Positions 42,601-56,824 of a stretch of DNA of 64,000 nt are shown here, piece after piece. Made by a program: the position numbers and the translations under genes. The notes below the pieces were generated by a model that did no database searches, had not been told where the DNA came from, and saw nothing but the letters and a program-made list of their open reading frames with translations. Within the stretch, counting starts at the first letter, position 1. Each line of letters opens with the position of its first letter. Location of the stretch: positions 62,001 through 126,000 of the IMG/VR virus record IMGVR_UViG_3300018004_000004; one strand, given 5' to 3'.

Positions 42601-45468
42601 TTGCATTTGGTCACGAATCAACTGATAGTTGTTAGCATAGGCAAAACCCACAAACTGATCCCATAGCTGATTGACCGGTGACTCTAAAGCAGGATCTGCA
42701 GCCAGAGCTGCAGAGACACGGGCATCAATATTCTTGGAGTAGGTTTGAAACAGCTGATAATCCGGCAGCTCGGATAGAGTTGGCCAGTTCTTAATCAGGA
42801 AATAGTCGGAATAGTTTAACTGACCACCATGACTCTTGATTCGATTCGCTATATCTGGGAAGTCTTCGGTGAAGGTATTATCTCTCAGACCTGTTAGGCT
42901 GCTTGGAAACTCATCTAGCAACTTAACCATCAGCAGTTGCTCCTGTTGCTCGAAAGGAGCAGGAGACAGCACATTGTAAGCTTCACTAGAGATAGGAGGA
43001 GGAGCCAGAAAATGCGTAAGCGCTTGCTGCACCGCTGTGCCTAATGCAACACCCCCAATAGCACCTGATACTGCACCTCCGGCTGGTGTTACAGTCGGTG
43101 ATTGCTGAGTTAACCAGTTCCACAAGAACTGATTAGCTTCTGCTCCAGTAGCAGTAGTCCCTGTCACTGAAGAAACAGCGGTCGATACTGTATTTGAGTA
43201 CGTCATCATCTTTGCCAAGTTCACCAAGGCAGTGAGCGATGTATCACCAGAGAAGTCATTGACGATCGTGCCGTCACGCAGGATCTTCAGCCAGATTTGA
43301 GAGAATCCAAAGGGTGTTGTATTCACCTGATATGGATTTGGACCCTCAGCATAATAGACGTTCTCATATTGAATGGCATTGTACTGGGCAGTTACTTCAC
43401 TTGCTGCTTCAGGTATAGTCTCAGTTGTCAGTTCCTTTGTCAACAAGCCGCGAATACCCAGCATGTTAAGGACTTGGTTCTGGACTGCTATCGATTGCAT
43501 ACGATGAATAGAGTTCACACGGCGCCACTCATTGCGCAGGCTCTGGAACTGATCTTCCAGCATCTTAGTCATATTGGATAGCAAGCTGAGTCCAGTATGT
43601 TCCGGTTCCGGATAACTATCAGCTTCTGGGATCTTGGCATTCGACAGCAACCCAACAGATACCAATGTAGACCCAGGACCCAAGTGCTGATAGGTAGGAT
43701 ATTGATATCCAGCCAATGGTATCTGAGAGATGTTATTGACGAACACAACGGAGATCTGCATCGGATAGATAAAGTGTTCTGGATCTATATCTTCGATATC
43801 CGAGCTGGCCGGCTGATCATCATTCTCCTTCGCTGTCATCTTGATGTAGTGTTCTTTGTATAGGAACGCAGCAGACTCAGTAGCATAATCATACGTATAG
43901 TTGTTGTTCAACAGATAGCGAATCTGCGTTGTCATCGGCGGTGGGGTTGTCGCAGTCGGTGGCGGGTTGGTTGAGTTAGAAATGTTTGGAGGTGTGTTTG
44001 TGTTATTACCGCTTACCACTGGAGTGGTATTCGTTGCCGGGTTAGGATTACCAGCAGGCGGTATTGTACCTTCCTGAGGAGTGAAAGCATTTGGATCATT
44101 CGATAGTGTGCGGTAAGTATTCGTAGCCTTCGTGAACCAAGTGTTATCCATACTTGGAGAACCTTGTCCATTATTCACGATGCCTTGTCCAAAACGATGT
44201 GCTTCCCAAGCCGACAGAGCAGAACCATTGTTAGCACGCAGCTTGAGAATAGCCCAACCTGTAGCCATGTCATTCTGAAGCTGGGCTTGTCCACCTGTGA
44301 TAGGCGGGCTCATCATCCAAGAGATATAGGTTGCCAATACAGGATCTGTTGACTGCGGACTTGGAACAGACTTAGAGCCCCAGTTGTATCCATTGTTGGT
44401 ACGAGCAGCAACTAGATAACCACTCTGCACAGCCACAGAAACATAGTGTGTGCCAAGATAAGTATCAGCTGCCTTCATAGCATCAATAGCAGCCGCGCGC
44501 ACCCACTGCAGAAGACCTACTGCAGCCGAAGGCTTGCCGGTATTGGTCACTGTAGACTTGTTGATCGCCGAATAGTTATTATTGGATTCCGGAAAGGCAG
44601 CAGACTTCACCCACCACTGAATAGCAGGATTATGGATATCAGTTGTGTCGATAATGATGTTATCTACGAAGTTTCCAGCGCTGGCTTTCCCCTGCGCAGC
44701 AGTACCTTGTCGAGTGGCTCCAGGATTGGCTGGATTGAGGGCTCCAGATCCGGCCGGCGGAGGATTGAGACCTGTATCGTTAGGCAGTGCACAAGCAGCA
44801 TACTCGCGCGCAGTAAACGTAATACTACCAGGTATTTGTCCCTGCCAGTTCGTGGAGGAGACAGTCATACCTGTATCAGGCTGTTGGGTAGGATCACTAT
44901 TCAGATTCGTCTGGATCCAGTTCAACAAGTAAGCTGTGAAAAGTGGCGAGTTCAGAGCACTGGAAGTAGAGTTGCCTGTCCAATCATCATACTGGAAGTT
45001 CTTGGAGTACGGACGATAGTTGAAGTACGACATCGTCATGGTAACTTGCAGTGTGTCAATCAAATCAGGATTAGTTTCCACACGCATCTGACGCAGAGCA
45101 AAAGCCATAACGTCATCTGCAGTAGCTCCTTGAGTTAGAACTGCAGGGTTCACGATCTGACGGATATGATCGTTCTCTACTTCAACGAAGGGAGCAGCCT
45201 TAAACATAGCCAGGAGCATCTGTACATCAGTCCATGCTGAGTAGTCGGCATTATCATAATCAGCAACGCACTTCCAAGTCCACGTTACATCCCAACGCGA
45301 CTGACCAGTCTTGATAGGAATAGCGAACGGGAAGCGCAGAGGCATAACCTCTTCTCCGTTGATAACCTTGTGGCACTGAATCTGTTCCGGAGGAATGTTC
45401 AGTACAAGGTTACCAATACGGAAGTATCCCGCTTGATTGTCATCTCGAGTTGTGATTATCTGTCCCAT
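39613..45468 (-). CDS. baseplate hub-like protein with lytic transglycosylase (SLT-like) insert
   Basis: LQTGTKVQVRMGFSNNP..L.PVFTGQVTQI and YRGELVLLGNPEIEPFD hub motifs; FPESNNN.SA.N...SAAVGLLQWV SLT motif; C-terminal hydrophobic segment. Confidence 0.8.
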   Translation of the reverse strand: MGQIITTRDDNQAGYFRIGNLVLNIPPEQIQCHKVINGEEVMPLRFPFAIPIKTGQSRWDVTWTWKCVADYDNADYSAWTDVQMLLAMFKAAPFVEVENDHIRQIVNPAVLTQGATADDVMAFALRQMRVETNPDLIDTLQVTMTMSYFNYRPYSKNFQYDDWTGNSTSSALNSPLFTAYLLNWIQTNLNSDPTQQPDTGMTVSSTNWQGQIPGSITFTAREYAACALPNDTGLNPPPAGSGALNPANPGATRQGTAAQGKASAGNFVDNIIIDTTDIHNPAIQWWVKSAAFPESNNNYSAINKSTVTNTGKPSAAVGLLQWVRAAAIDAMKAADTYLGTHYVSVAVQSGYLVAARTNNGYNWGSKSVPSPQSTDPVLATYISWMMSPPITGGQAQLQNDMATGWAILKLRANNGSALSAWEAHRFGQGIVNNGQGSPSMDNTWFTKATNTYRTLSNDPNAFTPQEGTIPPAGNPNPATNTTPVVSGNNTNTPPNISNSTNPPPTATTPPPMTTQIRYLLNNNYTYDYATESAAFLYKEHYIKMTAKENDDQPASSDIEDIDPEHFIYPMQISVVFVNNISQIPLAGYQYPTYQHLGPGSTLVSVGLLSNAKIPEADSYPEPEHTGLSLLSNMTKMLEDQFQSLRNEWRRVNSIHRMQSIAVQNQVLNMLGIRGLLTKELTTETIPEAASEVTAQYNAIQYENVYYAEGPNPYQVNTTPFGFSQIWLKILRDGTIVNDFSGDTSLTALVNLAKMMTYSNTVSTAVSSVTGTTATGAEANQFLWNWLTQQSPTVTPAGGAVSGAIGGVALGTAVQQALTHFLAPPPISSEAYNVLSPAPFEQQEQLLMVKLLDEFPSSLTGLRDNTFTEDFPDIANRIKSHGGQLNYSDYFLIKNWPTLSELPDYQLFQTYSKNIDARVSAALAADPALESPVNQLWDQFVGFAYANNYQLIRDQMQRAQSSPQLKPMFVTTQTITTPGNAQLPGHSCYLDMGLKDVTYVGRDNNPAMYFHDDNADLIASMQKQITSIVSQTMTSVTNFEQVTPNVDTGKLVHTNTASFTGNAQAIISNVKPSSYTMSKAFPTFKLFLMEDNAQKPFYAYDNFYSYATVLDMEIIRYRDRPDTAVIQVSNLLHMLDQHMFDGTPQGRQEARLHAPVTTNIPADQQLVIPAGGVASMDINQPTADAWTLDNRFPQIAAHRPVDTTTSNRQVDNKFPLRYFALQTGTKVQVRMGFSNNPDLLVPVFTGQVTQIEGDEILSIVCQSYMLELVVPAQDEIRKDGFTVDGRINKLTNALVKSVRDFPSNIPSIPGDLLGGIFGNTPAFGGNSTVGGYKIPGLNSPGGTVADVMSAMLSVSTAKHFGRWQLGAPTDHYIKGHNWNTLLGSVLILASSSPLTAGATGLESGYDRSFENILTTHIFGPDGTAIADAKGGARTWWYELPGGYGSPEYYIPKDSIMTPWTYIQDIARRYPEFILAVKQYGFPYTADATLVFANPHDFYSSRTPVPGEVELQQQAASDTIQFNLWWTGGTNSGQAQFRAFCNGVGSQWASSAENQYEYTLNGATEGSEFYTFFIATVGATLQSPNAAADKMIGYINGGGPGVFFNITNIFAQQMASNVSSLGLVIGTSPGKTISPFQGEQGLQQLVQNYYTWLNQQTQPGANLAVNARMKPVRRWHLVNGDNIIHNGINLNENFYNTVRLVNQTLPANEAIPSQYRRMLLADPFIVDKKNIKGDTPYTNAYMQSFLRDELAKAYRGELVLLGNPEIEPFDVLMLLDPSTGISGPVEVDSVIHSFNQETGFITIVRPRAFVVINDKLSMPIHQAVWDMLTRMETQIEGWTIHNPLINSSNLPVVEAELGILALIGAAAISPWIAVPAALAGGAAIFWTGKIVNRLNPMGIAPLTRFQRPWISGLEGWKVDDVLGTLQTKWQYFKEDEIEPLMFSFRQARNMGLI

Positions 45469-48400
45469 TAGGATTCCAGTTGTTCTCGAATCGTCTCACG
45501 ACGGCGGAGAGTACTCATCTTGTTTCTCCATCCGTTGCGATAGTTCACATTGATATTTGATACACCATTATTGCCAGAGATCTGACTAATCATACGTTGC
45601 ATTTCAATCGTATCCTGGCGATTCTGAGCCTTCATTCTTACTTCCAGATCTGTACGCTGGCGCATTGGCGCCACGATCGTTGTAGATGTACCACCGCGCA
45701 GAGGAAGCTGACGACGAGGTGGGTTAACAGAAGACATAGCACCGGTTATTGGCTCGCCCGGGACCTGATCTGTTACAGTCTCAGTAGTTTCTGGTCTGAA
45801 GTTCCCACGCGGCCGACCGAAAGTAGCCTGCGTCGGAGTAACCTTCTTGACATGGCTGGTAAGAACTGCTCCTACAGCCGCGGCTCCGACTCCAATAGCC
45901 AGAACACCTAGGTTACCTTTGGACTCTCTGTAAGTACTCTTGAGACCCTCATTGATGGCGCCGAGGACTTTGGAAACAGACATCCCCGAGCCTTTCTCGC
46001 GCGCCAGGCCAATCAGCCAAGGAGGAGGCGTACCCATCTCCTTGTACAAGGCCTGCAGACGATAGAGGGAATCACCCTCCATATCCGTAGTTGCCTTAGT
46101 CAGAAGTTCGGCAGCACGATCTGCCCTAACATTACGCCCTATGATAAACTCGGAGAGTGTTCCTTGGAACTTCTCGGAGTCCAGCACGTCCATCAAAACA
46201 TTCCGCTTGGTGCCGGGAGCTACCCTCATCCCAGTAAGCTCTTCAAACAAAGGAGCGGTCTCTGCAGTAATGATCGATTCCTTACCGTAGCCAGAGATAA
46301 CTTCCCTCATACCCTCGGTGAACTTAGCTACACCTTCCGGCGTGCGAGATTCCAAGCCACCTACCAATCTTCTGTACAATCCCAGAGGATCCTCAGGATT
46401 CAACTTCATCTTGCCCTTCTGGGCAGAGATAGGTACCTGACGGATCGTCCACAGCATGTGACCGAGGATATCTCTTTCCATCGGCTTCACACCGATTGTA
46501 GGATGCATCTCGACGTTCATGTACAAGCGAGTCAGTAAGTTAGAGTACGCACCAACCACACCACCAGCCATACGCTGTGTGACTTGTTCTGCTCTTCCAC
46601 CTGCACTAGCCAACTTAAGACTTTCTTCAAGCATAGAAGGCAGAGTCTTCACACCAGCTTCTGCGATGTTACGTGAGTCTTCAACGCTCCCGTACAGCAT
46701 CTCAAGAGTCTTCAGGCTTCTCCACTGGTTGCTATTCAGAGCATTGATAGCAGCCTGGGCTTCACGTTCGGCTTGAGAACCCTTGCGATAGAAGAACAGA
46801 TTCAGGATATCCTTATCGTCATCGGCGCCGAACAAGCCACGGATGCGCTCATCCATACCGACCATGTTAGGACCCATGCCAGCATCAGGAGCCACCTTCA
46901 CACGCATGTAAGGAGCTGACTGAATAGGGTGACGAGCAGCCGTAGCGTAGATATCTTCTCCGGCGAGTAATGCTTTACGGATCTCTGGGTCGCGGACTCG
47001 GCCGGCCATCTGCTCATTGATAAGGAGTTCAAATGGGTTTTCCTGGGCGCGCGTCTGAATGAAACCAGACACAGCTCCCAAGACATCTGTACCACGGGCA
47101 CGGTAGAATCCTTCCTTCCCGAACAGTACACGCTGGGCTTCATCAAGGTGAGCGGAGATCGCCGCGGACATCATAACGGGATCCTTCTGCCACTTGACTA
47201 CGTCCGCCAGCGTCTTTTCATAATCCGTGGGGCTATAAGTAAGACCCTCACCAACCTTTTCATAGAGGTTGCTACCACCGCCGTGTGCCAACTTACCAAG
47301 GACAGGAATGTGAGTAACTTCAAGGTCACGTCCAGCCACACGTGCGTACACCGGCTGATCAAGTTTGATAGAAAAGTTCTCTTGGACGAGCTTATTTGAG
47401 GGATCAAAGATACCTCCAACTCGGCCTTCCATCGTGCCTATTCTGAGATTGGCTGCAGCCTCCTCTATGGGGATAACAGTCCCCAGAGACTTGGTGAAGT
47501 CACCACCTACGAACTGGGCAGCAAAAGCAGAAGCTCTTCCCGGATCGCCACCATGGAAATCCAAGCGGCTCATCAACTCCTTCATACCTTCCACATTACC
47601 AGCTCTCCACATCTCGGAGAACATATCGTATGTGGCGCCGACCATCTGAGGTACATTACGGCGAGTGCTATCCCAGAACGCCGCAAAGGAGAACATGGCG
47701 TTCTTCTGCATGTAGTTCATCAGACTTTCTTCACCGCTACGTCTGAAGGCAGAGAAGAGCTCACCCTCGGTCCCAGGAGCACCACGCTGAGCAAAGCCAG
47801 CAACATCACGCAGGTAGTCTTCTGTAAGTTGACCCACCGACTGCATACGGAGTCGACGGCCCTCCAGATCCAGGCTGCGTACGTATTCCGAATCTTCGAG
47901 CAGATGGAAGACGTTATTTCCAGTACCAGTACGCTGCGCGCGAATACCCTGAGCAGCAAGATCAGCCATGTACTTATTGACACGATCCAATGCTTCCAGG
48001 TTTGCCCAGTCAGCCTTTAGATGCACACTGTTAGCAGCAATATCGCTAGACACAGCAGCTGCTTGCGATACCATAAGGCGGAAAGGATCGCTAGTCTTAG
48101 CTTGCATGTAGTGTAGCGGAGCTAGAGCTTCCACAAAGCTAGGGATAGCAGTCTTAGATCCAGTAGCTTCACCGTATAGATTCAGCAGCTCGACCTGGCG
48201 ACGGAAGATGTCTTCCTCGGGTACGATAGCCAGACCCTTCACGCCAGCGATGTCAATCTTGGCTCCTGTCTCTACTGGATACTCTTGACGCAGCTTGAGC
48301 TCGAACTGGCCGCTAGGTGTAGTGGACCAGCCTTCTATGAATGTAGAAGGAGCTTCCGACGTGACAGGATTCAAACCCTCAAATCCGATTAGTGTCTCTG

Positions 48401-50237
48401 GGCTAAGGGACTTTTTGATGTAATCCTCGGGGTTGAGATGAAGCTTGTCGACGTAGACGTTCTTACGCGACTCCATCTTCAGCCGGCGGAACTTCTCGTG
48501 AAGGATAATATCACCTTCACCCAACCCACCCAAGCCACGGCCGGCTTCTAGATAGCCCTTCTCGCCGAGCTTACCACTGATCTTACCCCAAGCAGCCTCT
48601 GCCTGGGCGCGTGTCATCTTTGGATTGTCGGCCAGTATGCGTTGGATAGCAGTCTCTTTATAGCCAGCCAATCCTTCTGCTGTTTTCGGCAAGTCGCCGA
48701 ACAGCGACTTCTGTTGTGGCGACACACCAGCCACGGACATCTGTATTTCCGGAACACCTCCGATGGATTCAACCGCGGAAGTTGTAAAGCTTGGACGGAA
48801 CTCCTCACCAATGGTCTCAGCTTTCAGCTGCAAGTCCTTGGTGAAGGATCTATAGAAATACGTTTGCTTAGCGAGCGAAGGCGCACCTCCCGGGATGTAG
48901 AGTTCCGATTCAGCGAACTCGAACACACCTTTCGATGTGCCTCCCTCAGAACCAATGCGAGTCATACCACGACCCAGCATCTTGATAGTGTACTGGATCC
49001 GTTCCAGGTCTGACAGATCCTCAAATGCCTTGCCTCCATAAATAGGCAAGCTGCTAGGAATAGCAGCGCGAGAACGGATATACAGAGCTTGTGGAGAAAG
49101 GTTAGCAAGCTGGGATTCAAGACGTGTTTGAAGCTTGAATGGATCTTCGGGGACCACGCCGCCGAAATAAGCAGCACGACCAATATCACCTTTCAGCTTT
49201 CCCCAATCCTGAGTCAGGTGTTCAGCAACGAATGTATCCAGTTCGAATACTCGTTCTGGCGTGTGAATGTGGCGCCCGACTCCAACCTTGCCTTCAATGT
49301 TGACGGATCCTGTCTTGGGATCAAACAGAGGGATATGAAGCTCGCCCTTTGGACCCTTGATGTTGACACCCAGCATACGGCCGACAGTTCCATCTGCCAC
49401 CTGCTCGGCAACGACCGTAGCAGAGGACACCTGTCCCTGACGGATCGCGCGCTGAATAGCATCAGCTACTTCTGGACGCTGACCGTGCAACTGACCATAA
49501 GCTTCCAGCCACTCCATACTAGTAGTCTTACCAGTCATGCTCATCTTGAGTGGATTGGCAAACGGACCGAGATCCTTGAGCTTCTTGGCCCAGCCAAGAC
49601 GGCTACTCAGCTCCTTGACGAAGCGGGGATCAGCTCTATTGGCGTTGACGATACCACGGAGCTCTGACTCTGCCATGCCGGCCAGAGGACCTCCGCGCGC
49701 AACTCTAGTAAGATCTAGCGGAGAAGCTACCCGCTGTCTGGCGCCTTCCACAGCATAGGTAAGCAGATCACGCTTGTTAGACATGCCCAGAAGCTCATGA
49801 AAGAGGTTCTCCGCCTGCTCCATGCTCTTCTCGATCGGTGGCCCACCGCGGTCAACCTGGCTGAAGAAATCTACGGCCGCATTGTCGGCCCAGGTACGGA
49901 AGATGGGATTGAGAGCTCCTGCACCCCCACCTGTCTTTTCCAGAGCTGAACGTAAGTCCTTGAATCTAGTAGCTTTATTGCTACCAAAAAACATAGGCAT
50001 CTCACGTGCGAACTGCATGCCAGCTCGAGCTGTACGGGAGGCAGATGTTACCAAGCCCGGGCCGGCAAGACCCATAGCCGCTACAATAGGGGTAGTTATG
50101 ACGGCAGTCCGGAAGTAACCGCGGTTCTCATCCTTAAGGAAAATAGGGGCCGTAGCCGAGGCAAAGGCAGTGGCAAAGGCCACACCTGGATGTTCAGTTG
50201 CAAGGCTTTTAACGGCTTTTAGGAACCCGGTAAACAT
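45468..50237 (-). CDS. candidate single-chain two-barrel (DPBB) virion RNA polymerase at the tape-measure position
   Basis: Beta-like GAKIDIAGVKG, then beta'-like ARHP...GLFGADDDKDILNL (DxDxD); hydrophobic termini. Confidence 0.72.
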   Translation of the reverse strand: MFTGFLKAVKSLATEHPGVAFATAFASATAPIFLKDENRGYFRTAVITTPIVAAMGLAGPGLVTSASRTARAGMQFAREMPMFFGSNKATRFKDLRSALEKTGGGAGALNPIFRTWADNAAVDFFSQVDRGGPPIEKSMEQAENLFHELLGMSNKRDLLTYAVEGARQRVASPLDLTRVARGGPLAGMAESELRGIVNANRADPRFVKELSSRLGWAKKLKDLGPFANPLKMSMTGKTTSMEWLEAYGQLHGQRPEVADAIQRAIRQGQVSSATVVAEQVADGTVGRMLGVNIKGPKGELHIPLFDPKTGSVNIEGKVGVGRHIHTPERVFELDTFVAEHLTQDWGKLKGDIGRAAYFGGVVPEDPFKLQTRLESQLANLSPQALYIRSRAAIPSSLPIYGGKAFEDLSDLERIQYTIKMLGRGMTRIGSEGGTSKGVFEFAESELYIPGGAPSLAKQTYFYRSFTKDLQLKAETIGEEFRPSFTTSAVESIGGVPEIQMSVAGVSPQQKSLFGDLPKTAEGLAGYKETAIQRILADNPKMTRAQAEAAWGKISGKLGEKGYLEAGRGLGGLGEGDIILHEKFRRLKMESRKNVYVDKLHLNPEDYIKKSLSPETLIGFEGLNPVTSEAPSTFIEGWSTTPSGQFELKLRQEYPVETGAKIDIAGVKGLAIVPEEDIFRRQVELLNLYGEATGSKTAIPSFVEALAPLHYMQAKTSDPFRLMVSQAAAVSSDIAANSVHLKADWANLEALDRVNKYMADLAAQGIRAQRTGTGNNVFHLLEDSEYVRSLDLEGRRLRMQSVGQLTEDYLRDVAGFAQRGAPGTEGELFSAFRRSGEESLMNYMQKNAMFSFAAFWDSTRRNVPQMVGATYDMFSEMWRAGNVEGMKELMSRLDFHGGDPGRASAFAAQFVGGDFTKSLGTVIPIEEAAANLRIGTMEGRVGGIFDPSNKLVQENFSIKLDQPVYARVAGRDLEVTHIPVLGKLAHGGGSNLYEKVGEGLTYSPTDYEKTLADVVKWQKDPVMMSAAISAHLDEAQRVLFGKEGFYRARGTDVLGAVSGFIQTRAQENPFELLINEQMAGRVRDPEIRKALLAGEDIYATAARHPIQSAPYMRVKVAPDAGMGPNMVGMDERIRGLFGADDDKDILNLFFYRKGSQAEREAQAAINALNSNQWRSLKTLEMLYGSVEDSRNIAEAGVKTLPSMLEESLKLASAGGRAEQVTQRMAGGVVGAYSNLLTRLYMNVEMHPTIGVKPMERDILGHMLWTIRQVPISAQKGKMKLNPEDPLGLYRRLVGGLESRTPEGVAKFTEGMREVISGYGKESIITAETAPLFEELTGMRVAPGTKRNVLMDVLDSEKFQGTLSEFIIGRNVRADRAAELLTKATTDMEGDSLYRLQALYKEMGTPPPWLIGLAREKGSGMSVSKVLGAINEGLKSTYRESKGNLGVLAIGVGAAAVGAVLTSHVKKVTPTQATFGRPRGNFRPETTETVTDQVPGEPITGAMSSVNPPRRQLPLRGGTSTTIVAPMRQRTDLEVRMKAQNRQDTIEMQRMISQISGNNGVSNINVNYRNGWRNKMSTLRRRETIREQLES

Positions 50238-50307: not shown

Positions 50308-53300
50308 TTAGCTGGTGCTCTCTTCCCGGTACTCGTCCTCATTCCGGCGAATATCCCGCATAACCTCTTTGTCTCCCTGTTCGTCGACGCTTATAGACAC
50401 GTTGGAGCCTGCCACTCGGTTAGGACCGCCCGAGGAGACCACTTGCGGATTCTTATCTTGTCCCTCGAGGATAATACGCTCCACAGTTTGTCGTATGCGT
50501 TCTGTAGGTTGTGAACCGCTAGAAACAAGTTCTCGCACAGCTCCATCGATGTAGGGCTTGCGCCAGAGGAGGGCTGCCCGGTCGTCGTAGATGTTGAAGT
50601 CGTGGTAATCATAGCCTTCGTTCTGAATAATCTTAAGCTTGACATCCTCATAGTCAATGCCTTGCTCCCATAGCGGAGAACCAGGACCGGGGATATCAAA
50701 GCCGAGCTTGCCAAAGGTTTCGGCGATTTGCTTCGAACGGATGTAGTCTGCGTAGCTGAGGTCTGTTTTCGCTTGCTCATACTCTTTGAGGCCTTCCTCT
50801 GTGTAGAGGACTCCGCCTTCTTCAATGGCTGGTATTATCTTGCCCGCGAGGCGAGCAAGCATAGCATCAGTTTTTACCCACTGAGCAGTAAGGGCTCGGG
50901 CTAGTTCCGGAGAGACAGATTCAAGAATCTGCTGGCGCTTGTCCGGATCTGTTTCTTGGAGGAATGCTGGGAAGTAAAGCTTCTCGCGCCGAGGGAGGGT
51001 TTGAGAGACAAACTGAGGATTGCCAAAGAGATTGGCACCAATATTCGTTCTCTTACCCTGACTAGTATACCTGCCTTTCTGGCCTGGATGCGCTCCTGCC
51101 TGCACATCTGCACGCAGATATTCCAACTCATCGACCAAGCTATCCATTAGACGGCGATGTTCGACTTCTTCCGGCACCAATACACCGCCAGTGAAACGAC
51201 GGTAGGTACCGCGGGCCCATGCAGCAATCATATCATGGAACGGCTTCTGCCATCTACGCATGCGCGCGCCGTAGACTTCCTGTTCCTGATAGAGAGACAA
51301 AGCTGTGCGCTCATTCCAGTACTTTGTGTGGAATGGAGTTGGTACGAAGCGGAGAGGTCCACCCTCACCTGTGAAGGCCAGAGTCTCGGCGTACTTACCG
51401 AGAGCTACCTGGGTGGAGGAATACATGGCCTGAGCTTCTGCCCCGCCGTAATCCTTTCTGAACTGTCCGAGACCTCGATCGATGATTTCTTTGTTGATAT
51501 TAACATCATCAATGAAGATGACAGCACGAGACTCAGCCGCATGCTCTTCAGTACCCTTAGGCACAACAAGAGTAGCCTGCATGCCAACCTGGCTAGACAA
51601 GTAATCATCCAGAGAAGCTTGTTTCTCCGTAACGGCCTTAGCACTCTGAGAGCGAGTAAGTTCATTCTCCTCGCCGAGTGTTGTAGCTGAGAGATCGGAA
51701 GCAGACATACCAAGAGAACTGAATATGAACTTGCGTCCTGGATACTGCTCCAGCTCAATACCTTCTGGTGTAGCCTTGGTGATCGTTCCTTGGATCTGTT
51801 CGATCGAAGCAGTGAAACGACGCTGACCGAACTGGATCGTCGATTCCTTCATCTGGCGCACTTGATCTTCAGTGCGTGCAAACTCGATCTCCAGACGAGC
51901 ATCTCTCTGTGCGGCCGCGCGCACCTTGGAGCGATAGATCATGTACTCCTTACTCCAAGGAGCAACATCAGCCAGAATCTTGTAACGATAGATGTCTGGG
52001 TATTCTTCTGCCTTCAAGCCACGAAGCTCTGGATGCAGAGCAGCATAACCACGGCCTGGAAGACGAGCACCACCTTCCGGTATCTTGGCGAACGGATCGC
52101 CAGTACGGAAGTTGATCATGTAATCTTCGCCAGGCAGCCAACGAGGCATTGTATTCGGGATCTCATTAGCTTGCGGAGCTAGCTTATCAGGCTGAATGAA
52201 ACGGCGGAGAGGTTCTGAATAACCGAACGGCATGCCACCAGTTCCGCTAGGGTTGAAGCCAGACACAGCACCCAACTCACGCTGGTAGTACTGACGGGAC
52301 AGATTCGTCATTTGACGACTGCCCTGCAATACAACATCTTGACCCGGTGTTCCGGCGCCAGGAGTTCCAGCCTTACCATAAAGGGTTGTAGCTATGAACC
52401 CAGGCAGACCTGTATATTCAGCAAAGGCCAGCGCTTCACGACCGACAACATCCTTGAAGCCAAACTCCTCACGAGGCCGAGATGGCGCCAGGCCACCCAA
52501 CGCCATGTTAGGTTCTAGACGCGGGCTATACAACGTATAGTTGTTGATGTCCCATTCGCCTTGGTGCATTCTCTGTGTTGGCTTTACGATGCGGCCGACT
52601 GTGGCAGCCAGCAGCGGACCAATGAGAGGCACGTTGGAGAAAGCAGGAGATGTGATTGGGTATGGACGGCTAGCGTAGTTCGCGCGTTCCAGCCAGTATG
52701 GATCCTTTATGTACTTGAACGGATGCAGCAGTGGGTGATGTTCCCAGTATGCATCTTCCGAACCATAGGTCGATACCATCTCGGCCTTGGTCTTCATCAA
52801 CTGATACCAGTGCGGACGGAAGTACTTGATGCGACCGCCACTGAACGGAGTGGAACCTACATCCCACCAACGGCCGGCGCGGATTGGAACTTCTTCTTCA
52901 CCAGAGTAGATGCGTTGCAGCTCATCTTCAGTCTTACGGCTGCCCAACATACCAGGCACGAAAGGCAGAGCCAGCAAAGCACCGATACCTGCACCCTTCC
53001 AGAAGGCCTTGTGAGAAGCAGCTACTCGAGCAGCGTGGACTGGGAACTCTTGGGCGCCACGAGCAATGTTGACCCAGTGAATACCTGCACCAATAGCACC
53101 AGCTCCGATAGGCAGAGCTAACGGACCATACTGCGGACCTGGTACGATCTCTTCGTACTTATCTGTGATCGCACGGAGGCCTGGGATTGCGTCGGTTGCG
53201 CGCGCCCAGGCAAGATGAGCCTTAAGCGGAACCTCGGCGAGCGTCTCAGCTGGTTTATTTCCCAGCTGGTAGTTGATGTAACGTGCGGCCGTGATAGCAA

Positions 53301-55233
53301 GATATGCAGGCAGCACACGCTTGAGCATCAGCGCATTGAGCATTCCGCCTTCGCCGGCGAACGGAATGTGGAACAGTTTGTTGTATGAGCCCTTAGGCAG
53401 ACCCATACCGATATCAGACAACAGACGGAGTGGGCGCTCAGCAGCTTCGAATGCTACACGTTGACCTGTTCTGTAGGCCGATTCGATACCACCCACGAGT
53501 CCAGGCTGACGACCGTAGAGAGGTTCGAAGAACTGGAACTCTCCACCAATCTGTCTCTTGAAAGCCTGTCCCTTTGTGAGGGGAGTTCCTGGTCTCTGGC
53601 TGGCGCGGAGATTCTGGAACATCTCCCACATCTCAGCAAGAGGACCTTTGTCAGTCAGTGTACGAGGGAATACCTGTTCGCGGAGCTTGGCGCCAAAGGC
53701 AGCCGATGATCCTGTCAGCCGGCCGCGTTCGGCAAAGCGAATAGCTTCACCGCGGCCGCCAACCAAACTCAGATACGGAGAGGAAGCTGAGGTTCGAGTG
53801 AACCTCATTCCTGTCTTAGCAAAGCGTTCATCCAGGGCGCTGACACCAATCAGGCGCTCGATGTGCTTACCCATCTCGGTAAGCTCAGAACCGCGTATCA
53901 GTTGTTCGGCCGCAAAGGAAACTTCCTCTGGCAGATAACTGGACATGCGCTGAGACAGACCGAAGGTACGGAAGAGGCCGCCAGGCGAACGCGCTTCTAC
54001 CGTCTTCATGAACTGATAGACGCCCTCAGCATAGCCAGACCAGTTCTTAAGAGCAAACTTATGTGCTCCTACAACTGCGGCGCCACCAGCCAACCAGGCA
54101 GCTACCTTCAGAGTATTGCGATCGTCCTGTCCATCCCAACCGGATCCAAAATCAGTCAAGGCATGACGGCTCTCAGCAGCCAGACCTGTACCACTCAAAC
54201 CGGTGATCTGAGTCTGACGATCGCTTCTCTTGCTGCTTGCGATAGCCCACGCTGCGGTTGCCGCGGCAGCAAAGACCAGGGCAACAGAGATACCCTTTCC
54301 TATGGCACTGACTTTGTTAGGCAGGACCTTGGCACCACGCTCAGCCTGAGCAGCTACCTTCTCAGCCCAGGGGCTGGCATAGATCTTGGAGAAGAACGTC
54401 TCGGCAGTCTCACCTGGGGGCAAGAGTTGTGCAGAGCCCAGAGCTTCTTCCCAACTGTGCCCACGCTGTAGGTTTCTCTTGGCTGTGCGCAGGCGCTCAA
54501 AGAGGGTCTGCTCGACCTTGACGTCAGTCACAGCCTCATGATAGCCGGCAGCTCCAGCCAGCTTGGGACCCATGAGTCTTTCAAGTCCGCCGGCCGCACC
54601 AGCAATATTCTCAACCTTCCAGCCAGGAACCCACTGCATCTCCTCTACGTTACGCGCCAGCATACCTGGGCCGGTAGTCTTGGAGATAGGAGTGGATGGG
54701 CCCATGCGCAGGTGACGTTCTGCGAAAGCTGGGTTGTCTTGTCCGTAACCCAGCGCCAGTTCAAAGAATGACTGCTCCAAGCCGAATACCTTTACTCCCT
54801 TGCGCTTGAAGAAGTCCTTGTATCCAGCGAGGCTGGGATAACGGCCGGCGATCTCAGTGAGCACACCAGTATCGTACTTGACATTCCAGCCAGTCAGTAG
54901 GAAACGCTTCTTACGAGAGAGTTCTTCTTCGGCCGAGGCAAAGAAGCGTCGAGCTGCTTCTTCTTCACCGACCTGACCAAGCTTCATAGCCTGAGAAAGA
55001 ACTTGCTCGCCTTTCGCATAGTTGTACGCAAACGGGATATGAATCCCGCTCACAGGATCGGTATATCCAGTGCGAGGCTTTACTAATGTGGTGGGATGAA
55101 ACGGGGATGCTACGTAAGGAGGGAGTTTTGAAGCGAAGATCTGGAGCAGGCCTGTGTTCTTATGTCCAGCGGACAGGCCTGTAGTCTCGACGTCGAGAAC
55201 ATGAAAGAAATGCTTTTGATGCCAGGTTGCCAT
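50308..55233 (-). CDS. tape-measure-like protein with N-terminal DEDDh 3'-5' exonuclease and a degenerate SNase-like domain
   Basis: LDVETTGL, GWNVKYD, YHEAVTDV; several Gly/Ala hydrophobic segments; RAVIFIDDVNINKEIIDRGLG. Confidence 0.78.
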   Translation of the reverse strand: MATWHQKHFFHVLDVETTGLSAGHKNTGLLQIFASKLPPYVASPFHPTTLVKPRTGYTDPVSGIHIPFAYNYAKGEQVLSQAMKLGQVGEEEAARRFFASAEEELSRKKRFLLTGWNVKYDTGVLTEIAGRYPSLAGYKDFFKRKGVKVFGLEQSFFELALGYGQDNPAFAERHLRMGPSTPISKTTGPGMLARNVEEMQWVPGWKVENIAGAAGGLERLMGPKLAGAAGYHEAVTDVKVEQTLFERLRTAKRNLQRGHSWEEALGSAQLLPPGETAETFFSKIYASPWAEKVAAQAERGAKVLPNKVSAIGKGISVALVFAAAATAAWAIASSKRSDRQTQITGLSGTGLAAESRHALTDFGSGWDGQDDRNTLKVAAWLAGGAAVVGAHKFALKNWSGYAEGVYQFMKTVEARSPGGLFRTFGLSQRMSSYLPEEVSFAAEQLIRGSELTEMGKHIERLIGVSALDERFAKTGMRFTRTSASSPYLSLVGGRGEAIRFAERGRLTGSSAAFGAKLREQVFPRTLTDKGPLAEMWEMFQNLRASQRPGTPLTKGQAFKRQIGGEFQFFEPLYGRQPGLVGGIESAYRTGQRVAFEAAERPLRLLSDIGMGLPKGSYNKLFHIPFAGEGGMLNALMLKRVLPAYLAITAARYINYQLGNKPAETLAEVPLKAHLAWARATDAIPGLRAITDKYEEIVPGPQYGPLALPIGAGAIGAGIHWVNIARGAQEFPVHAARVAASHKAFWKGAGIGALLALPFVPGMLGSRKTEDELQRIYSGEEEVPIRAGRWWDVGSTPFSGGRIKYFRPHWYQLMKTKAEMVSTYGSEDAYWEHHPLLHPFKYIKDPYWLERANYASRPYPITSPAFSNVPLIGPLLAATVGRIVKPTQRMHQGEWDINNYTLYSPRLEPNMALGGLAPSRPREEFGFKDVVGREALAFAEYTGLPGFIATTLYGKAGTPGAGTPGQDVVLQGSRQMTNLSRQYYQRELGAVSGFNPSGTGGMPFGYSEPLRRFIQPDKLAPQANEIPNTMPRWLPGEDYMINFRTGDPFAKIPEGGARLPGRGYAALHPELRGLKAEEYPDIYRYKILADVAPWSKEYMIYRSKVRAAAQRDARLEIEFARTEDQVRQMKESTIQFGQRRFTASIEQIQGTITKATPEGIELEQYPGRKFIFSSLGMSASDLSATTLGEENELTRSQSAKAVTEKQASLDDYLSSQVGMQATLVVPKGTEEHAAESRAVIFIDDVNINKEIIDRGLGQFRKDYGGAEAQAMYSSTQVALGKYAETLAFTGEGGPLRFVPTPFHTKYWNERTALSLYQEQEVYGARMRRWQKPFHDMIAAWARGTYRRFTGGVLVPEEVEHRRLMDSLVDELEYLRADVQAGAHPGQKGRYTSQGKRTNIGANLFGNPQFVSQTLPRREKLYFPAFLQETDPDKRQQILESVSPELARALTAQWVKTDAMLARLAGKIIPAIEEGGVLYTEEGLKEYEQAKTDLSYADYIRSKQIAETFGKLGFDIPGPGSPLWEQGIDYEDVKLKIIQNEGYDYHDFNIYDDRAALLWRKPYIDGAVRELVSSGSQPTERIRQTVERIILEGQDKNPQVVSSGGPNRVAGSNVSISVDEQGDKEVMRDIRRNEDEYREESTS

Positions 55234-55238: not shown

Positions 55239-55559
55239 TTACACACTGAAGCTCTTACCACAGCCACACTGGCTGCGCACATGTGGATTAGTAAACCTAA
55301 ATCCAGATGCGTCTAGGCCTTCGATGTAGTCTACAGATACATCCTCAAGATACATCAAGCTCATTGGGTCCACGACTACTTTCACGGGACCAAACTCAAA
55401 CAGTTCCCAGTCCGGCTCGTATTCATCAACGAGACCGATAGAGTATTCGAATCCGGAGCAGCCGCCACCTTTCACACCAAGGCGGACGAACGGCCGATCT
55501 GGGTTATCTTTGAGGACGCTGACGAGCTTGTCCTGGGCGGCGATTGAAAGCTGGATCAT
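55239..55559 (-). CDS. iscA: A-type Fe-S cluster carrier protein (IscA/SufA/ErpA, HesB family)
   Basis: RLGVKGGGCSGFEY, VVDPMSLMYL, GFRFTNP...CGCGKSF. Confidence 0.95.
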   Translation of the reverse strand: MIQLSIAAQDKLVSVLKDNPDRPFVRLGVKGGGCSGFEYSIGLVDEYEPDWELFEFGPVKVVVDPMSLMYLEDVSVDYIEGLDASGFRFTNPHVRSQCGCGKSFSV

Positions 55560-56070
55560 TCCTTCTCTCCAATGCTATTTGCTGCGCATCTGTGAGCTGC
55601 TTTTTCTTTCGTTGTAACTTGCTCTTAGAATCCTTGACAGACTTAGGATCCATCGGGTTGAGTGGCACGCCCGACACAAACTCAGCTTGGGCCAAGCGAG
55701 TAAGGAGTGTTTCCGAATCCCAGCCATCCATCACCTCGAAGGGGATCTTGAATACAGATGCTATGAAGGCCTGTGCGCACAACAGATAAGAGTCTGTTAC
55801 CTTCTTGCGCGCGTTCTCCAGCGGTAGAGACAGCGTCTGGAAAGATCCAGAGAACGGGCTCTTCTCAAGCTGGTCCTTGTAAATCCACATCATGATCCCG
55901 GCCGGAATCTCTTCCGGCCGCGGACCGTGGACGACACACAACTTATAGACGTGTAGGGCTACTTCAGCGGGAGGCCCTTGACGAGAACGGGCATCTCGGT
56001 ACTCTCCCCAAGTAAGATCACGCCAGACTACACGTGTCCCACTGGGCCAAGTGGCGGCCCTAGTTGTCAT
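55504..56070 (-). CDS. putative tail assembly chaperone
   Basis: Between the tube genes and the tape-measure locus; WRDLTWGEY motif. Confidence 0.6.
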   Translation of the reverse strand: MTTRAATWPSGTRVVWRDLTWGEYRDARSRQGPPAEVALHVYKLCVVHGPRPEEIPAGIMMWIYKDQLEKSPFSGSFQTLSLPLENARKKVTDSYLLCAQAFIASVFKIPFEVMDGWDSETLLTRLAQAEFVSGVPLNPMDPKSVKDSKSKLQRKKKQLTDAQQIALERRNDPAFNRRPGQARQRPQR

Positions 56071-56073
56071 AGA

Positions 56074-56553
56074 TTACAGCTCGGCTGAAAGGAACTCGAT
56101 CTGCTGTGGATCCATGAAATCCGACAGCTTCGTTACCTTCGTGAAGAGGGTGGCCGGGAGGCCAGCAGTGCCATTGCGCAACCGAACGTCGGTCAGCTTA
56201 CCATTCTCGCCGGCATTGGTCCAGACAACAGCCTTGATAACGGCGTGGAGTTGCATTTCGAGTTCAGCATCCGCCACTGGAGTTGCCATGTTTTGGATCT
56301 GCTTTTGGATTGTGGTCAGCTCTAGACCGGTCAGTCCGCGGACAATGTAAGCACGCTTACCGTCGGGAGTAAAGAGTTCGAGTCTGTTGTTAGGGGCTTG
56401 CTGCTTCCATGCAGCAATCTGATCCTTCGTCGGAGCCCCAGGCAGGGATGCTAGGAACTCGTGTGGATCCATATTGGAACGGTCTACAGGCTTGGTTTCG
56501 CCTGGAGTACCAGTACCTTGTACTTCTACTTCTGCTTCCGGATTGTGTGTCAT
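56074..56553 (-). CDS. putative tail assembly chaperone
   Basis: AGGAG RBS; IAAWKQQ...YIVRGLT..E...AGLPATL...V..LSDF; operon position. Confidence 0.65.
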   Translation of the reverse strand: MTHNPEAEVEVQGTGTPGETKPVDRSNMDPHEFLASLPGAPTKDQIAAWKQQAPNNRLELFTPDGKRAYIVRGLTGLELTTIQKQIQNMATPVADAELEMQLHAVIKAVVWTNAGENGKLTDVRLRNGTAGLPATLFTKVTKLSDFMDPQQIEFLSAEL

Positions 56554-56742: not shown

Positions 56743-56824
56743 AGACTCGCTTGACCTCTCTGTACATTCCGCGGGCCACTACAATAACCGCCACAACGCA
56801 GAATATGATGTTACCCCAATGCAT
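56702..56824 (-). CDS. small membrane peptide (40 aa)
   Basis: TAATG-coupled; MHWGNIIFCVVAVIVVARGMYREVKR. Confidence 0.55.
   Translation of the reverse strand: MHWGNIIFCVVAVIVVARGMYREVKRVYGNHGRCDTEEGQ

What the first reader, a model, noticed from the sequence alone, without database searches (positions are those of the whole stretch)
50308..55233. Tape-measure-like giant protein with an intact DEDDh exonuclease at its N-terminus
Seen: the first ~245 aa contain ExoI LDVETTGL, ExoII GWNVKYD and ExoIII YHEAVTDV. A hydrophobic helix and more Gly/Ala-rich segments follow, then an SNase-like tail (RAVIFIDDVNINKEIIDRGLG) that lacks the DGDT catalytic motif. Established: these are DnaQ/RNase T-family DEDDh signatures. 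Inference: a 3'-5' nuclease is injected with the genome. It could process genome ends, trim RNA 3' ends (RNase T-like, relevant to the tRNA island) or counter host defence. The SNase fold is probably a non-catalytic nucleic-acid binder.
Basis: partly seen in the sequence, partly recalled or inferred. Interest (0 to 1): 0.75.

Follow-up and report, generated by a model that had tools for sequence, protein, structure and literature searches.

The report
Tail-module virion protein carrying an exonuclease
A 1,641-residue tail-module protein of an uncultivated peat-soil jumbo phage begins with a well-preserved DNA/RNA-trimming enzyme (a DEDDh 3'-5' exonuclease) joined by a membrane helix to a conserved virion-protein scaffold, which suggests, without proving it, that the phage delivers a nuclease into its host during infection.

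Summary
All five catalytic residues are among only 11 invariant columns in 20 orthologues (39% mean identity). An AlphaFold model (pLDDT 92) matches only DEDD exonucleases (Z 11-13.6), and profile searches reach RNase T. The SNase-like region (aa ~1143-1275) also folds like staphylococcal nuclease (Z 8-9) and lacks its catalytic residues.

The protein is not the tape measure. It is the orthologue of Bacillus phage 0305phi8-36 gp145, a virion protein found by mass spectrometry. It lies between the tail chaperone genes and the gene at the tape-measure position.

The exonuclease plus one transmembrane helix is an old, clade-specific N-terminal module. It is present in 42 of 120 family members, lost at least 9 times, and catalytically decayed in 4 of 44. 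Other members carry a DUF559/Vsr-like endonuclease or an intact SNase in the same scaffold. 114 of 120 members have no cysteine.

Best reading: an ejected, membrane-inserting tail protein that delivers nucleases. Delivery and target are inferred, not shown. I found no support for a tRNA-processing role, and the phage polymerase has its own exonuclease domain. Verdict: new variant of a known kind; interest about 0.6.

The parts
50308..55233 (-). Whole gene, 1641 aa plus stop. It is a gp145-family virion protein with an N-terminal exonuclease module.
   Evidence: ORF list and translation. Identical in four independent metagenome runs.
54454..55233 (-). DEDDh 3'-5' exonuclease domain, aa 1-260.
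   Evidence: AF2 model pLDDT 91.8. VIA Z 11-13.6 to ExoI, Pol III epsilon, Cap18, Cas2-DnaQ, RNase T and TREX1/2 over model residues 1-260. Family profile against PDB: RNase T, E 3.7e-5. hhalign against five E. coli DEDDh domains: 89.5%, E 2e-6.
55174..55197 (-). ExoI motif LDVETTGL (D14, E16).
   Evidence: Positions. D14 and E16 are invariant in 20 orthologues.
54871..54891 (-). ExoII motif GWNVKYD (N117, D121).
   Evidence: W116, N117 and D121 are invariant. Aligned in register with the N..D of RNase T and DnaQ.
54520..54543 (-). ExoIII motif YHEAVTDV (H232, D237; H-x4-D, the 'h' subtype).
   Evidence: H232 and D237 are invariant.
54238..54294 (-). Transmembrane-like helix 1, aa 314-332. It belongs to the same optional module as the exonuclease.
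   Evidence: Kyte-Doolittle mean 1.97 over 19 residues. Absent, together with the exonuclease domain, in most short family members.
54106..54237 (-). Conserved linker, aa 333-376 (SKRxDRQTQITGL...DFGSGW).
   Evidence: Consensus of the full-length alignment. Retained without the exonuclease in P0109 and P0126.
54049..54105 (-). Transmembrane-like helix 2, aa 377-395. It lies near the N-terminus of the scaffold that all family members share.
   Evidence: The short forms begin about 40 residues before this helix.
51214..53442 (-). Core shared with 0305phi8-36 gp145 and Acinetobacter phage ME3 gp035, aa ~598-1340. aa 750-1100 is the best conserved part.
   Evidence: tblastn E 2e-21 to 4e-39, 28-32% identity. 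Conservation profile. 319 relatives at E<1e-5. No Pfam, PHROG or PDB sequence match.
51409..51807 (-). SNase-like OB-fold domain, aa ~1143-1275, predicted to be non-catalytic.
   Evidence: AF2 pLDDT 72. Foldseek top 50 all SNase/SND1. VIA Z 8-9, model residues 34-166 against SNase 6-127. Columns equivalent to the SNase Ca-binding and Arg residues are not conserved.
50311..51336 (-). Conserved C-terminal region, aa 1300-1641, function unknown. In two relatives an intact SNase domain is inserted here.
   Evidence: Conservation 0.6-0.74. P0119 and P0125 have PF00565 (E ~3e-11) inserted at the equivalent of aa ~1483-1491.
55239..56553 (-). Upstream context. An IscA/HesB-type Fe-S carrier gene (55239-55559) and two small ORFs (55504-56070, 56074-56553) sit at the position of the 0305phi8-36 tail chaperonin genes.
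   Evidence: PF01521 E 3.8e-18. Synteny with ORF143/144.
39613..50237 (-). Downstream context. A 1589-aa ORF (45468-50237) sits at the position of the 0305phi8-36 tape measure gene orf146. It is followed by a 1951-aa hub/lysin protein (39613-45468).
   Evidence: Synteny. phrog_20474 E 5e-37 for the 1951-aa protein. The 1589-aa protein has no detectable homologue in cultured phages and no cysteine.

Best explanation
The gene encodes a tail-module virion protein of the 0305phi8-36 gp145 family. In this clade of peat-soil jumbo myoviruses the family carries an extra N-terminal module: a catalytically competent DEDDh 3'-5' exonuclease (aa 1-260), one transmembrane helix and a conserved linker.

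Proposed mechanism:
1. The protein is built into the tail next to the tape-measure-position protein and the hub.
2. At infection it is expelled through the tube as a cysteine-free, unfoldable chain.
3. It inserts into the host inner membrane through its hydrophobic segments.
4. This places the exonuclease, and in relatives a DUF559/Vsr-like endonuclease or an active SNase, at the site of genome entry.
5. There it degrades nucleic acids with free 3' ends.

The most likely targets are host or competitor nucleic acids (defence-related ssDNA or RNA, or nicked host DNA), that is, an early anti-host or counter-defence activity. Maturation of the phage's own DNA or tRNA is less likely.

What is shown and what is inferred:
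- Shown: the domain, its fold, its selective conservation, the family relationship and the modularity.
- By homology only: presence in the virion.
- Inferred: ejection, membrane topology and substrate.
For: Exonuclease identity:
- Motifs at aa 13-20, 115-121 and 231-238.
- All five catalytic residues are invariant in 20 orthologues at 39% mean identity, and 40 of 44 near-complete domains keep D-E-D-H-D.
- Family profile against PDB: the four best hits are RNase T, E 3.7e-5, with the motifs collinear.
- hhalign against five E. coli DEDDh domains: 89.5%.
- AF2 pLDDT 91.8. Foldseek and VIA hits are exclusively DEDD exonucleases, Z up to 13.6.

Virion and tail context:
- The gene order sheath, tube, tube paralogue, chaperone-position genes, this gene, tape-measure-position gene, hub matches 0305phi8-36 ORF137-147 and ME3 gp029-037.
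- gp145 is annotated as found in virions by mass spectrometry.

Translocation-type features:
- Hydrophobic helices.
- No cysteine in 1641 aa, and none in the neighbouring 1589 aa, where about 8 each are expected (P ~4e-4 each).
- 114 of 120 family members are cysteine-free.

Nuclease-cargo pattern:
- The same scaffold independently carries DUF559/REase_MTES_1575 inserts in about 18-20 members.
- It carries a Pfam-recognised SNase with an intact-looking DGD...TPE...GR pattern in P0119 and P0125.

Accessory character:
- The module is absent in 78 of 120 members, and at least 9-11 state changes are needed on the core tree.
- The exonuclease tree mirrors the core subclades, which points to old vertical inheritance followed by losses.
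- The short forms have no separate exonuclease ORF upstream.

Not the replication proofreader: the phage family-A polymerase has its own PF01612 exonuclease domain.
Against: - There are no virion proteomics, expression or activity data for this uncultivated phage, and no RNA run was listed.
- The location of gp145 within the virion is not known even in 0305phi8-36 (PMC2147016 leaves it unassigned).
- The domain is too divergent for Pfam RNase_T to detect.
- No free-standing relatives were found in 1.8 to 5.8 billion proteins, so substrate cannot be transferred from a close homologue.
- An injected non-specific 3'-5' exonuclease would also threaten the incoming phage DNA ends. No protective mechanism was identified.
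- Four lineages keep the domain with broken catalytic residues, so a non-catalytic role may coexist.
- The DUF559 inserts could be selfish elements rather than cargo.
Confidence: 0.45

Rival explanations
1. The domain is a DNA-end grip rather than a degrading enzyme. The exonuclease fold binds the 3' end of the phage genome inside the tail and pilots or protects it during entry. This would be analogous in role to T4 gp2 or Mu N, which is my own knowledge and not tested here. Catalysis would be minimal or regulated.
For: The N-terminus of a tail-lumen protein would lie towards the head and the DNA end (general knowledge of tape-measure orientation; inference). Four of 44 lineages retain the folded domain with substituted catalytic residues. 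The neighbouring SNase-like domain is a predicted non-catalytic nucleic-acid binder.
Against: All five metal-binding and general-base residues are invariant across 39%-identity orthologues, while most other columns vary. The one clearly inactivated copy (P0030, D-K-D-R-D) sits on a long branch, as expected for decay rather than a maintained binding role. The module has been lost at least 9 times without replacement, which is hard to reconcile with an essential piloting role.
Confidence: 0.15
2. The exonuclease works in the producing cell, not in the next host. It would be a late, membrane-tethered nuclease that degrades host DNA or RNA or processes replication or packaging intermediates. It may be cleaved off before or during tail assembly.
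For: It is encoded in the late structural block. Phage structural proteins are often proteolytically processed (general knowledge). A relative encodes a trypsin-like protease and a ClpB-like ATPase right next to the gene.
Against: Fusion to a virion scaffold through a transmembrane helix has been conserved through deep divergence. The whole protein, the exonuclease domain included, is cysteine-free like the rest of the scaffold. That fits a shared fate such as export or ejection better than a cytoplasmic late enzyme. Independent nuclease insertions occur in the middle and C-terminal parts of the same scaffold.
Confidence: 0.15
3. The nuclease is displayed on the outside of the virion. The protein would be an external baseplate or tail component, and its nucleases would digest extracellular DNA in peat biofilm matrix to reach the cell surface.
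For: SNase-type nucleases are typically extracellular, Ca-dependent enzymes (general knowledge). Absence of cysteine also fits extracellular proteins. The environment is peat, wetland and soil.
Against: The gene lies between the chaperone-position genes and the tape-measure-position and hub genes, not among the fibre or wedge genes. Two strong transmembrane-like helices flank a conserved linker. DEDDh enzymes are Mg-dependent and typically intracellular (general knowledge).
Confidence: 0.08
4. The domain is an RNase T-like tRNA or tmRNA 3'-end maturase serving the phage's island of 25 tRNA genes, or a trans-acting proofreader for replication.
For: RNase T is the best sequence-profile hit. The window carries 25 tRNA genes and a tmRNA gene.
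Against: The domain is membrane-tethered and fused to a structural protein. A close relative with the same gene order lacks it entirely. By structure it is equally close to ExoI, epsilon, Cap18 and TREX, so there is no specific RNase T signal. The phage polymerase carries its own PF01612 exonuclease domain.
Confidence: 0.04

Closest known systems
Bacillus phage 0305phi8-36 gp145 and Acinetobacter phage ME3 gp035 ('virion structural protein')
   Same: Homologous over aa ~600-1340 (28-32% identity, E down to 4e-39). Same position between the tail chaperonin genes and the tape-measure-position and hub genes. Hydrophobic helix near the start of the shared scaffold.
   Different: gp145 and gp035 start directly at the hydrophobic region. 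They have no DxE motif or exonuclease domain. Their function is also unknown (PMC2147016).
DEDDh (DnaQ-like) 3'-5' exonucleases: RNase T, Exonuclease I N-domain, Pol III epsilon, CBASS Cap18, Cas2-DnaQ, TREX1/2, oligoribonuclease
   Same: All three Exo motifs with H-x4-D. RNase H-like fold, Z 11-13.6 over the whole domain. Spacing of ExoI to ExoII (107 aa) is close to the 102 aa of RNase T, a figure from my own knowledge of the E. coli enzyme.
   Different: Not detected by Pfam RNase_T (PF00929) or any Pfam model. About 50 extra residues lie between ExoII and ExoIII. It is fused through a transmembrane helix to a 1300-residue virion scaffold. No free-standing close relatives were found.
Tape measure and ejection proteins with enzymatic or membrane-inserting parts (T5 Pb2, lambda gpH, T7 gp14-16; my own knowledge), plus lambda tape measure at the inner membrane during injection (PMC13190303)
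   Same: Very large tail-module protein with hydrophobic segments, encoded next to chaperone-like genes. Plausibly expelled into the envelope at infection.
   Different: By synteny it is not the length-determining protein. The modelled parts are globular. The enzymatic cargo in known cases is a cell-wall hydrolase, not a nuclease.
Polyvalent proteins of phages and conjugative elements (Iyer et al. 2017, PMC5512222)
   Same: A giant multidomain protein that combines effector-type domains, thought to be delivered with the DNA. Domain content varies between orthologues.
   Different: No zincin-like peptidase, methylase-helicase or other hallmark domains. The protein-language-model lead to LPD38 was not confirmed by HMM searches. 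A text search of that paper for DnaQ found nothing, and its only mention of 'exonuclease' is in the reference list.
Staphylococcal nuclease / Tudor-SN OB-fold domains
   Same: Predicted fold of aa ~1143-1275 (Z 8-9, nearly full-length alignment). Two relatives carry a genuine PF00565 domain elsewhere in the scaffold.
   Different: The equivalents of the Ca-binding Asp residues and the catalytic Arg and Glu are not conserved. Not detected by Pfam. hhalign to the genuine SNase of P0119 is insignificant.

Membership tests
DEDDh (DnaQ-like) exonuclease superfamily | ExoI motif D-x-E | tested here: met
   D14 and E16 in LDVETTGL. Invariant in 20 orthologues.
DEDDh (DnaQ-like) exonuclease superfamily | ExoII motif with conserved Asp (N-x3-D) | tested here: met
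   N117 and D121 are invariant. Aligned in register with RNase T and DnaQ.
DEDDh (DnaQ-like) exonuclease superfamily | ExoIII motif H-x4-D (the 'h' subtype) | tested here: met
   H232 and D237 are invariant. 40 of 44 domains keep all five residues.
DEDDh (DnaQ-like) exonuclease superfamily | RNase H-like alpha/beta fold | tested here: met
   AF2 pLDDT 91.8. VIA Z 11-13.6 over 160-185 residues. Top 50 hits are all DEDD exonucleases.
DEDDh (DnaQ-like) exonuclease superfamily | Metal-dependent 3'-5' exonuclease activity | not testable with these tools
   Needs an enzyme assay.
RNase T family proper (Pfam PF00929 / RNase T orthologues) | Match to the family HMM above its cut-off | tested here: not met
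   No PF00929 hit at E<=10 for the protein, its pieces, 20 orthologues or the whole genome. Only the reverse search, family profile against PDB, reaches RNase T at E 3.7e-5.
RNase T family proper (Pfam PF00929 / RNase T orthologues) | Homodimer with basic nucleotide-binding segments | not tested
   No multimer modelling was available.
Tape measure protein | Gene between the tail chaperone genes and the distal tail/hub gene | tested here: inconclusive
   It follows the chaperone-position ORFs directly. A second giant ORF, equivalent to the assigned tape measure orf146, lies between it and the hub (PMC2147016).
Tape measure protein | Extended, mostly alpha-helical chain whose length scales with tail length | tested here: not met
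   The two modelled regions are globular alpha/beta domains. Pro+Gly is 16%. Tail length is unknown.
0305phi8-36 gp145-like virion protein family | Sequence homology of the core | tested here: met
   tblastn E 2e-21 to 4e-39 over aa ~600-1340. 319 relatives.
0305phi8-36 gp145-like virion protein family | Conserved position in the tail module | tested here: met
0305phi8-36 gp145-like virion protein family | Physical presence in virions | not testable with these tools
   Known only for gp145, from the record's mass-spectrometry note.
Staphylococcal nuclease (PF00565) | OB-fold of SNase | tested here: met
   Foldseek E 5e-4, top 50 all SNase/SND1. VIA Z 8-9. The model has moderate confidence, pLDDT 72.
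Staphylococcal nuclease (PF00565) | Ca-binding Asp residues and catalytic Arg/Glu | tested here: not met
   No conserved acidic or Arg residues at the equivalent columns of alignment A4. No Pfam hit.
Polyvalent proteins (Iyer et al. 2017) | Hallmark domains (zincin-like peptidase, LPDs, methylase-helicase and others) | tested here: not met
   No Pfam hits. The LPD38 lead was not confirmed.

The most novel reading that the evidence does not exclude
The gp145-like proteins of this widespread peat and soil jumbo-phage lineage are a modular, cysteine-free nuclease-delivery scaffold. A tail-lumen protein would insert into the host membrane at the injection site and present interchangeable nucleases (DEDDh exonuclease, DUF559/Vsr-like endonuclease, SNase) to the cytoplasm in the first seconds of infection. 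This would be a phage-side mirror of host membrane nucleases such as SNIPE, used to destroy defence nucleic acids, host DNA or the DNA of superinfecting competitors.
Probability: 0.3. Interest if true: 0.8.

Novelty: new variant of a known kind. Interest (0 to 1): 0.6.

Why it matters
Known proteins that phages carry in the particle and deliver at infection include RNA polymerases, ADP-ribosyltransferases, anti-restriction proteins and cell-wall hydrolases. The best structural matches among predicted viral proteins were free-standing or polymerase- or helicase-linked exonucleases, with no tail proteins among them.

If the module is delivered, it would show that phages can bring nucleases to the point of genome entry. 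It would also give a function to the large, unannotated gp145-type proteins of 0305phi8-36-like jumbo phages.

The family offers natural controls: sister phages with and without the module, and copies with decayed catalytic residues. The domain is small enough for direct biochemical testing.

Tried and rejected
- Pfam and PHROG scans of the whole protein, four pieces of it and 20-45 family members found nothing relevant.
- megablast against cultured phages found nothing.
- Exhaustive phmmer with aa 1-300, and a profile search of 5.8 billion proteins, found only orthologues and no free-standing donor family.
- A single-sequence PDB search found nothing. Only the family profile reached RNase T.
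- The protein-language-model lead to LPD38 was not confirmed by HMM searches of the genome or of 45 family members, nor by a PDB profile search.
- hhalign of the SNase-like region against the genuine SNase of P0119 was insignificant. The fold link rests on the structure model.
- 'Short family members encode the exonuclease as a separate upstream gene' is rejected. The upstream gene ends 5-9 nt before the start in L005 and L006.
- 'The DUF559 insert is an intein' is rejected. The insert is about 115 residues, too small for a Hint domain plus a nuclease.
- 'It is the replication proofreader' is rejected. The family-A polymerase has its own PF01612 domain.
- The 1589-aa neighbour has no detectable homologue in cultured phages, so its tape-measure role rests on position only.
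- No RNA run was listed, so there is no expression evidence.
- Whole-record searches of the relatives' contigs were not possible.
Full report
**1. What is at the coordinates**

The interval 50308-55233 is one open reading frame on the minus strand, ATG to TAA, 1641 residues. The window is bases 62001-126000 of a 215,395-bp uncultivated virus record that CheckV rates as complete. A strong hydrophobic helix lies at 314-332 and a second at 377-395. Gly/Ala-rich hydrophobic stretches lie at 705-723, 747-765 and 865-883. The gene is not an assembly artefact. At least 20 peat, wetland and soil metagenome runs hold it. Contigs from four runs of different studies (2014-2025) match it with 0-1 differences in 4926 bases, and with no indel or joint.

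**2. Is the N-terminus a DEDDh exonuclease?**

Standard family scans do not detect it. Pfam and PHROG give no hit for the protein, for pieces of it or for 20 orthologues. The genome has no PF00929 match at all. An exhaustive phmmer search of 1.8 billion representatives returns only orthologous proteins of about 1630-1660 residues.

Four independent lines nevertheless agree.

(a) Conservation. In 20 orthologues with 39% mean column identity, only 11 of 300 columns are invariant. These are D14, E16, E90, W116, N117, D121, R131, L135, W205, H232 and D237, so all five catalytic positions are among them. The chance of that for five pre-named positions is about 2e-8. Across 44 near-complete domains, 40 keep D-E-D-H-D.

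(b) Profile searches. The family profile finds RNase T as the four best PDB sequences (E 3.7e-5), with the three motifs collinear. hhalign gives 89% against E. coli RNase T. It gives 89.5% (E 2e-6), spanning ExoI to ExoII in register, against an alignment of the E. coli DnaQ, Orn, ExoI, RNase T and ExoX domains.

(c) Structure. The AlphaFold2 model of residues 1-300 has pLDDT 91.8 and pTM 0.87. Its 50 best Foldseek hits in the PDB are all DEDD exonucleases. VIA-align gives Z 11-13.6 over 160-185 residues, covering model residues 1-260. The matches include Exonuclease I, Pol III epsilon, the CBASS exonuclease Cap18, Cas2-DnaQ, RNase T and TREX1/2.

(d) Protein-language-model features point to phage oligoribonuclease/RNase_T clusters.

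By structure no single subfamily is clearly closest, so 'RNase T-like' should be read as DEDDh, not as an RNase T orthologue. Compared with RNase T, the domain has about 50 extra residues between ExoII and ExoIII. The RNase T spacing used here is from my own knowledge.

**3. The SNase-like region**

A profile of residues 1110-1300 has thermonuclease as its best PDB hit, but this is not significant (E 0.69). Language-model features are 91/100 SNase at a weak score. The AlphaFold2 model has moderate confidence (pLDDT 72). Its 50 best Foldseek hits are all SNase or SND1 (E 5e-4). VIA gives Z 8-9 with nearly full-length alignment, model residues 34-166 to SNase 6-127. In the family alignment, the columns that would hold the Ca-binding aspartates and the catalytic Arg and Glu are not conserved. 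Only a Gly, a Ser and an Asn are invariant there.

**4. What protein is this?**

PHROG and Pfam hits of the neighbouring genes identify a myovirus tail module:
- tail sheath, 60018-62483;
- two tube-type proteins, 59229-59927 and 58158-59138;
- a 444-aa protein with a carboxypeptidase-regulatory-like domain;
- small ORFs;
- this gene;
- a 1589-aa ORF;
- a 1951-aa hub/lysin protein (phrog_20474);
- baseplate wedge genes.

tblastn of the protein finds only jumbo myoviruses, over residues ~600-1340 at 28-32% identity. These are Bacillus phages 0305phi8-36, WH1, Edson and KLEB27-3, Moorella phage MTATph1 and Acinetobacter phage ME3. In 0305phi8-36 the match is ORF145, 'virion structural protein; identified as virion protein by mass spectrometry'. 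It lies between the two tail chaperonin genes (ORF143/144) and ORF146, the 'hypothetical tape measure protein', which is followed by the hub ORF147. ME3 has the same order. The comparative paper on 0305phi8-36 assigns the tape measure to orf146. It notes that the chaperonin genes are 'one gene removed' from it, and it leaves gp145 without a function (PMC2147016).

The finding is therefore the gp145 orthologue, not the tape measure. The 1589-aa neighbour holds the tape-measure position, although it has no detectable homologue in cultured phages. gp145 and ME3 gp035 begin directly at a hydrophobic segment and have no DxE motif.

**5. The exonuclease is an optional, ancient module**

A search with the conserved core (residues 740-1100) finds 319 relatives. 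The 120 best fall into length classes:
- about 1630-1790 residues, with the exonuclease domain (42 proteins);
- about 1290-1460 residues, without it (78 proteins).

Most short forms lack the exonuclease, the first transmembrane helix and the conserved linker together, and start about 40 residues before the second helix. A few (P0109, P0126) keep the helix and linker without the exonuclease. They do not encode the exonuclease separately. In two contigs the upstream gene ends 5-9 nt before the start codon. One of these contigs is from a close relative with the same IscA-like upstream gene.

On a tree of the core, presence of the module needs at least 11 changes, and well-supported branches force at least 9. 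The exonuclease-domain tree recovers the same subclades as the core tree. This indicates old vertical inheritance with repeated loss rather than recent shuffling. The exonuclease domain evolves faster than the core. The copy with a clearly destroyed active site (P0030, D-K-D-R-D) sits on a long terminal branch. The picture is of an accessory enzyme: it is under purifying selection where it is kept, and it can be lost.

**6. The same scaffold collects other nucleases**

About 18-20 family members carry a DUF559/REase_MTES_1575 (Vsr-like) domain of about 115 residues. It is inserted in frame at the equivalent of residues ~908-915, and the typical D...E.(D/E)G..H pattern is present. This is too small to be an intein. 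Two exonuclease-bearing members, P0119 and P0125, have a Pfam-recognised SNase (E ~3e-11) with an intact-looking active-site pattern. It is inserted at the equivalent of residues ~1483-1491. Three unrelated nuclease folds in one virion scaffold suggest that nucleic-acid degradation, rather than one specific processing step, is what is being selected. The DUF559 inserts could alternatively be selfish elements.

**7. No cysteine**

The 1641-aa protein and the 1589-aa neighbour contain no cysteine. The other 29 ORFs of the structural block average 0.48%. About 8 cysteines are therefore expected in each, and P(0) is about 4e-4 each. 114 of 120 family members are cysteine-free and none has more than two. 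Avoidance of cysteine is typical of proteins that are translocated unfolded or that work outside the cytoplasm (general knowledge). It fits ejection through the tail tube, but it is not proof.

**8. Mechanism**

Shown:
- a catalytically equipped DEDDh domain;
- a transmembrane-helix tether;
- a conserved tail-module scaffold that is homologous to a protein found in virions by mass spectrometry;
- modular nuclease content;
- absence of cysteine.

Inferred: the protein lies in or at the tail lumen or hub, is expelled at infection, and inserts into the inner membrane. This is as proposed for tape measure proteins. Lambda's tape measure protein is at the inner-membrane entry site during injection (PMC13190303). 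The inserted protein would expose its nuclease at the point of genome entry.

I commit to an early anti-host or counter-defence nuclease as the most likely role, at about 0.45 including delivery. The rivals are:
- a DNA-end grip or pilot (0.15);
- a late enzyme of the producing cell (0.15);
- an externally displayed matrix DNase (0.08);
- tRNA maturation or proofreading (0.04).

The last is disfavoured for four reasons. The module is missing from close relatives. It is membrane-tethered. By structure it is not specifically close to RNase T. The phage's family-A polymerase has its own PF01612 exonuclease domain in the same reading frame. An open problem for the favoured model is how the incoming phage DNA ends would escape the enzyme.

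**9. Comparison with what is known, and novelty**

The protein is a member of the gp145-like family, since homology and synteny are met. Its N-terminal domain is a member of the DEDDh superfamily, since motifs and fold are met and activity is untested. It is not demonstrably a tape measure, an RNase T orthologue, an active SNase or a polyvalent protein in the sense of Iyer et al. The LPD38 lead failed HMM tests.

Among predicted viral structures, the best matches are free-standing or polymerase- or helicase-linked exonucleases, with no tail proteins.

I rate it a new variant of a known kind: an enzyme-bearing, probably ejected virion protein with an unreported cargo type. Interest is about 0.6. 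The domain call is solid and the family-level pattern is unexpected. Delivery and target remain untested, and the phage is uncultivated.

Noticed in passing
window 55239-55559 (-): A 106-aa IscA/HesB-type iron-sulphur cluster carrier gene (PF01521, E 3.8e-18) sits inside the tail module, 5 nt upstream of the giant gene. It is conserved at the same place in a relative (L006). Its two giant downstream neighbours contain no cysteine, so they cannot be its clients. Its role in a structural gene block is unexplained.
   Followed up: partly
window 45468-50237 (-) and 50308-55233 (-): Both giant neighbouring proteins (1589 and 1641 aa) have no cysteine, against about 8 expected in each. 114 of 120 homologues of the 1641-aa protein are also cysteine-free.
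   Followed up: yes
window 1610-11483 (+): An island of 25 predicted tRNA genes plus a tmRNA gene (tag AEFEELPLAA). One minus-strand tRNA-Arg call (3502-3574) overlaps plus-strand tRNA genes and is probably spurious.
   Followed up: no
P0034, P0076, P0100, P0106 and others (relatives); equivalent to window aa ~908-915 of the 1641-aa protein: About 18-20 family members have a DUF559/REase_MTES_1575 (Vsr-like) endonuclease domain of about 115 aa inserted in frame in the conserved core. It is too small to be an intein.
   Followed up: partly
P0119 aa 1533-1612, P0125 aa 1515-1596 (relatives): Two exonuclease-bearing relatives carry an additional Pfam-recognised SNase domain with an intact-looking active-site pattern, inserted in the C-terminal region. 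P0125 has at the same time lost two catalytic residues of its DEDDh domain.
   Followed up: partly
L005 11942-14306: In a relative that lacks the exonuclease module, a ClpB-like AAA+ ATPase, a 141-aa ORF and a trypsin-like protease gene lie between the gp145-like gene and the tape-measure-position gene.
   Followed up: no
G000:C1:20241-22827 (outside the window): The phage family-A DNA polymerase matches Pfam in two separate open frames: 462 aa with the PF01612 exonuclease and the polymerase N-terminal part, then 331 aa with the rest. This may be a split polymerase, a frameshift or an intervening element.
   Followed up: no
window 56824-58158 (-): A 444-aa tail-module protein has an N-terminal carboxypeptidase-regulatory-like (prealbumin-fold) domain and a weak match to the phage tail tube C-terminal domain. 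It corresponds in position to 0305phi8-36 gp142.
   Followed up: no
window 50308-55233: The gene is found at 94-100% of sampled words in most of the 20 peat, wetland and soil metagenome runs that hold it (2014-2025, many studies; lowest share 0.85), so this phage is widespread and genetically stable. One homologue is filed under a Candidatus Acidiferrales (Acidobacteriota) MAG, a possible host lead.
   Followed up: partly
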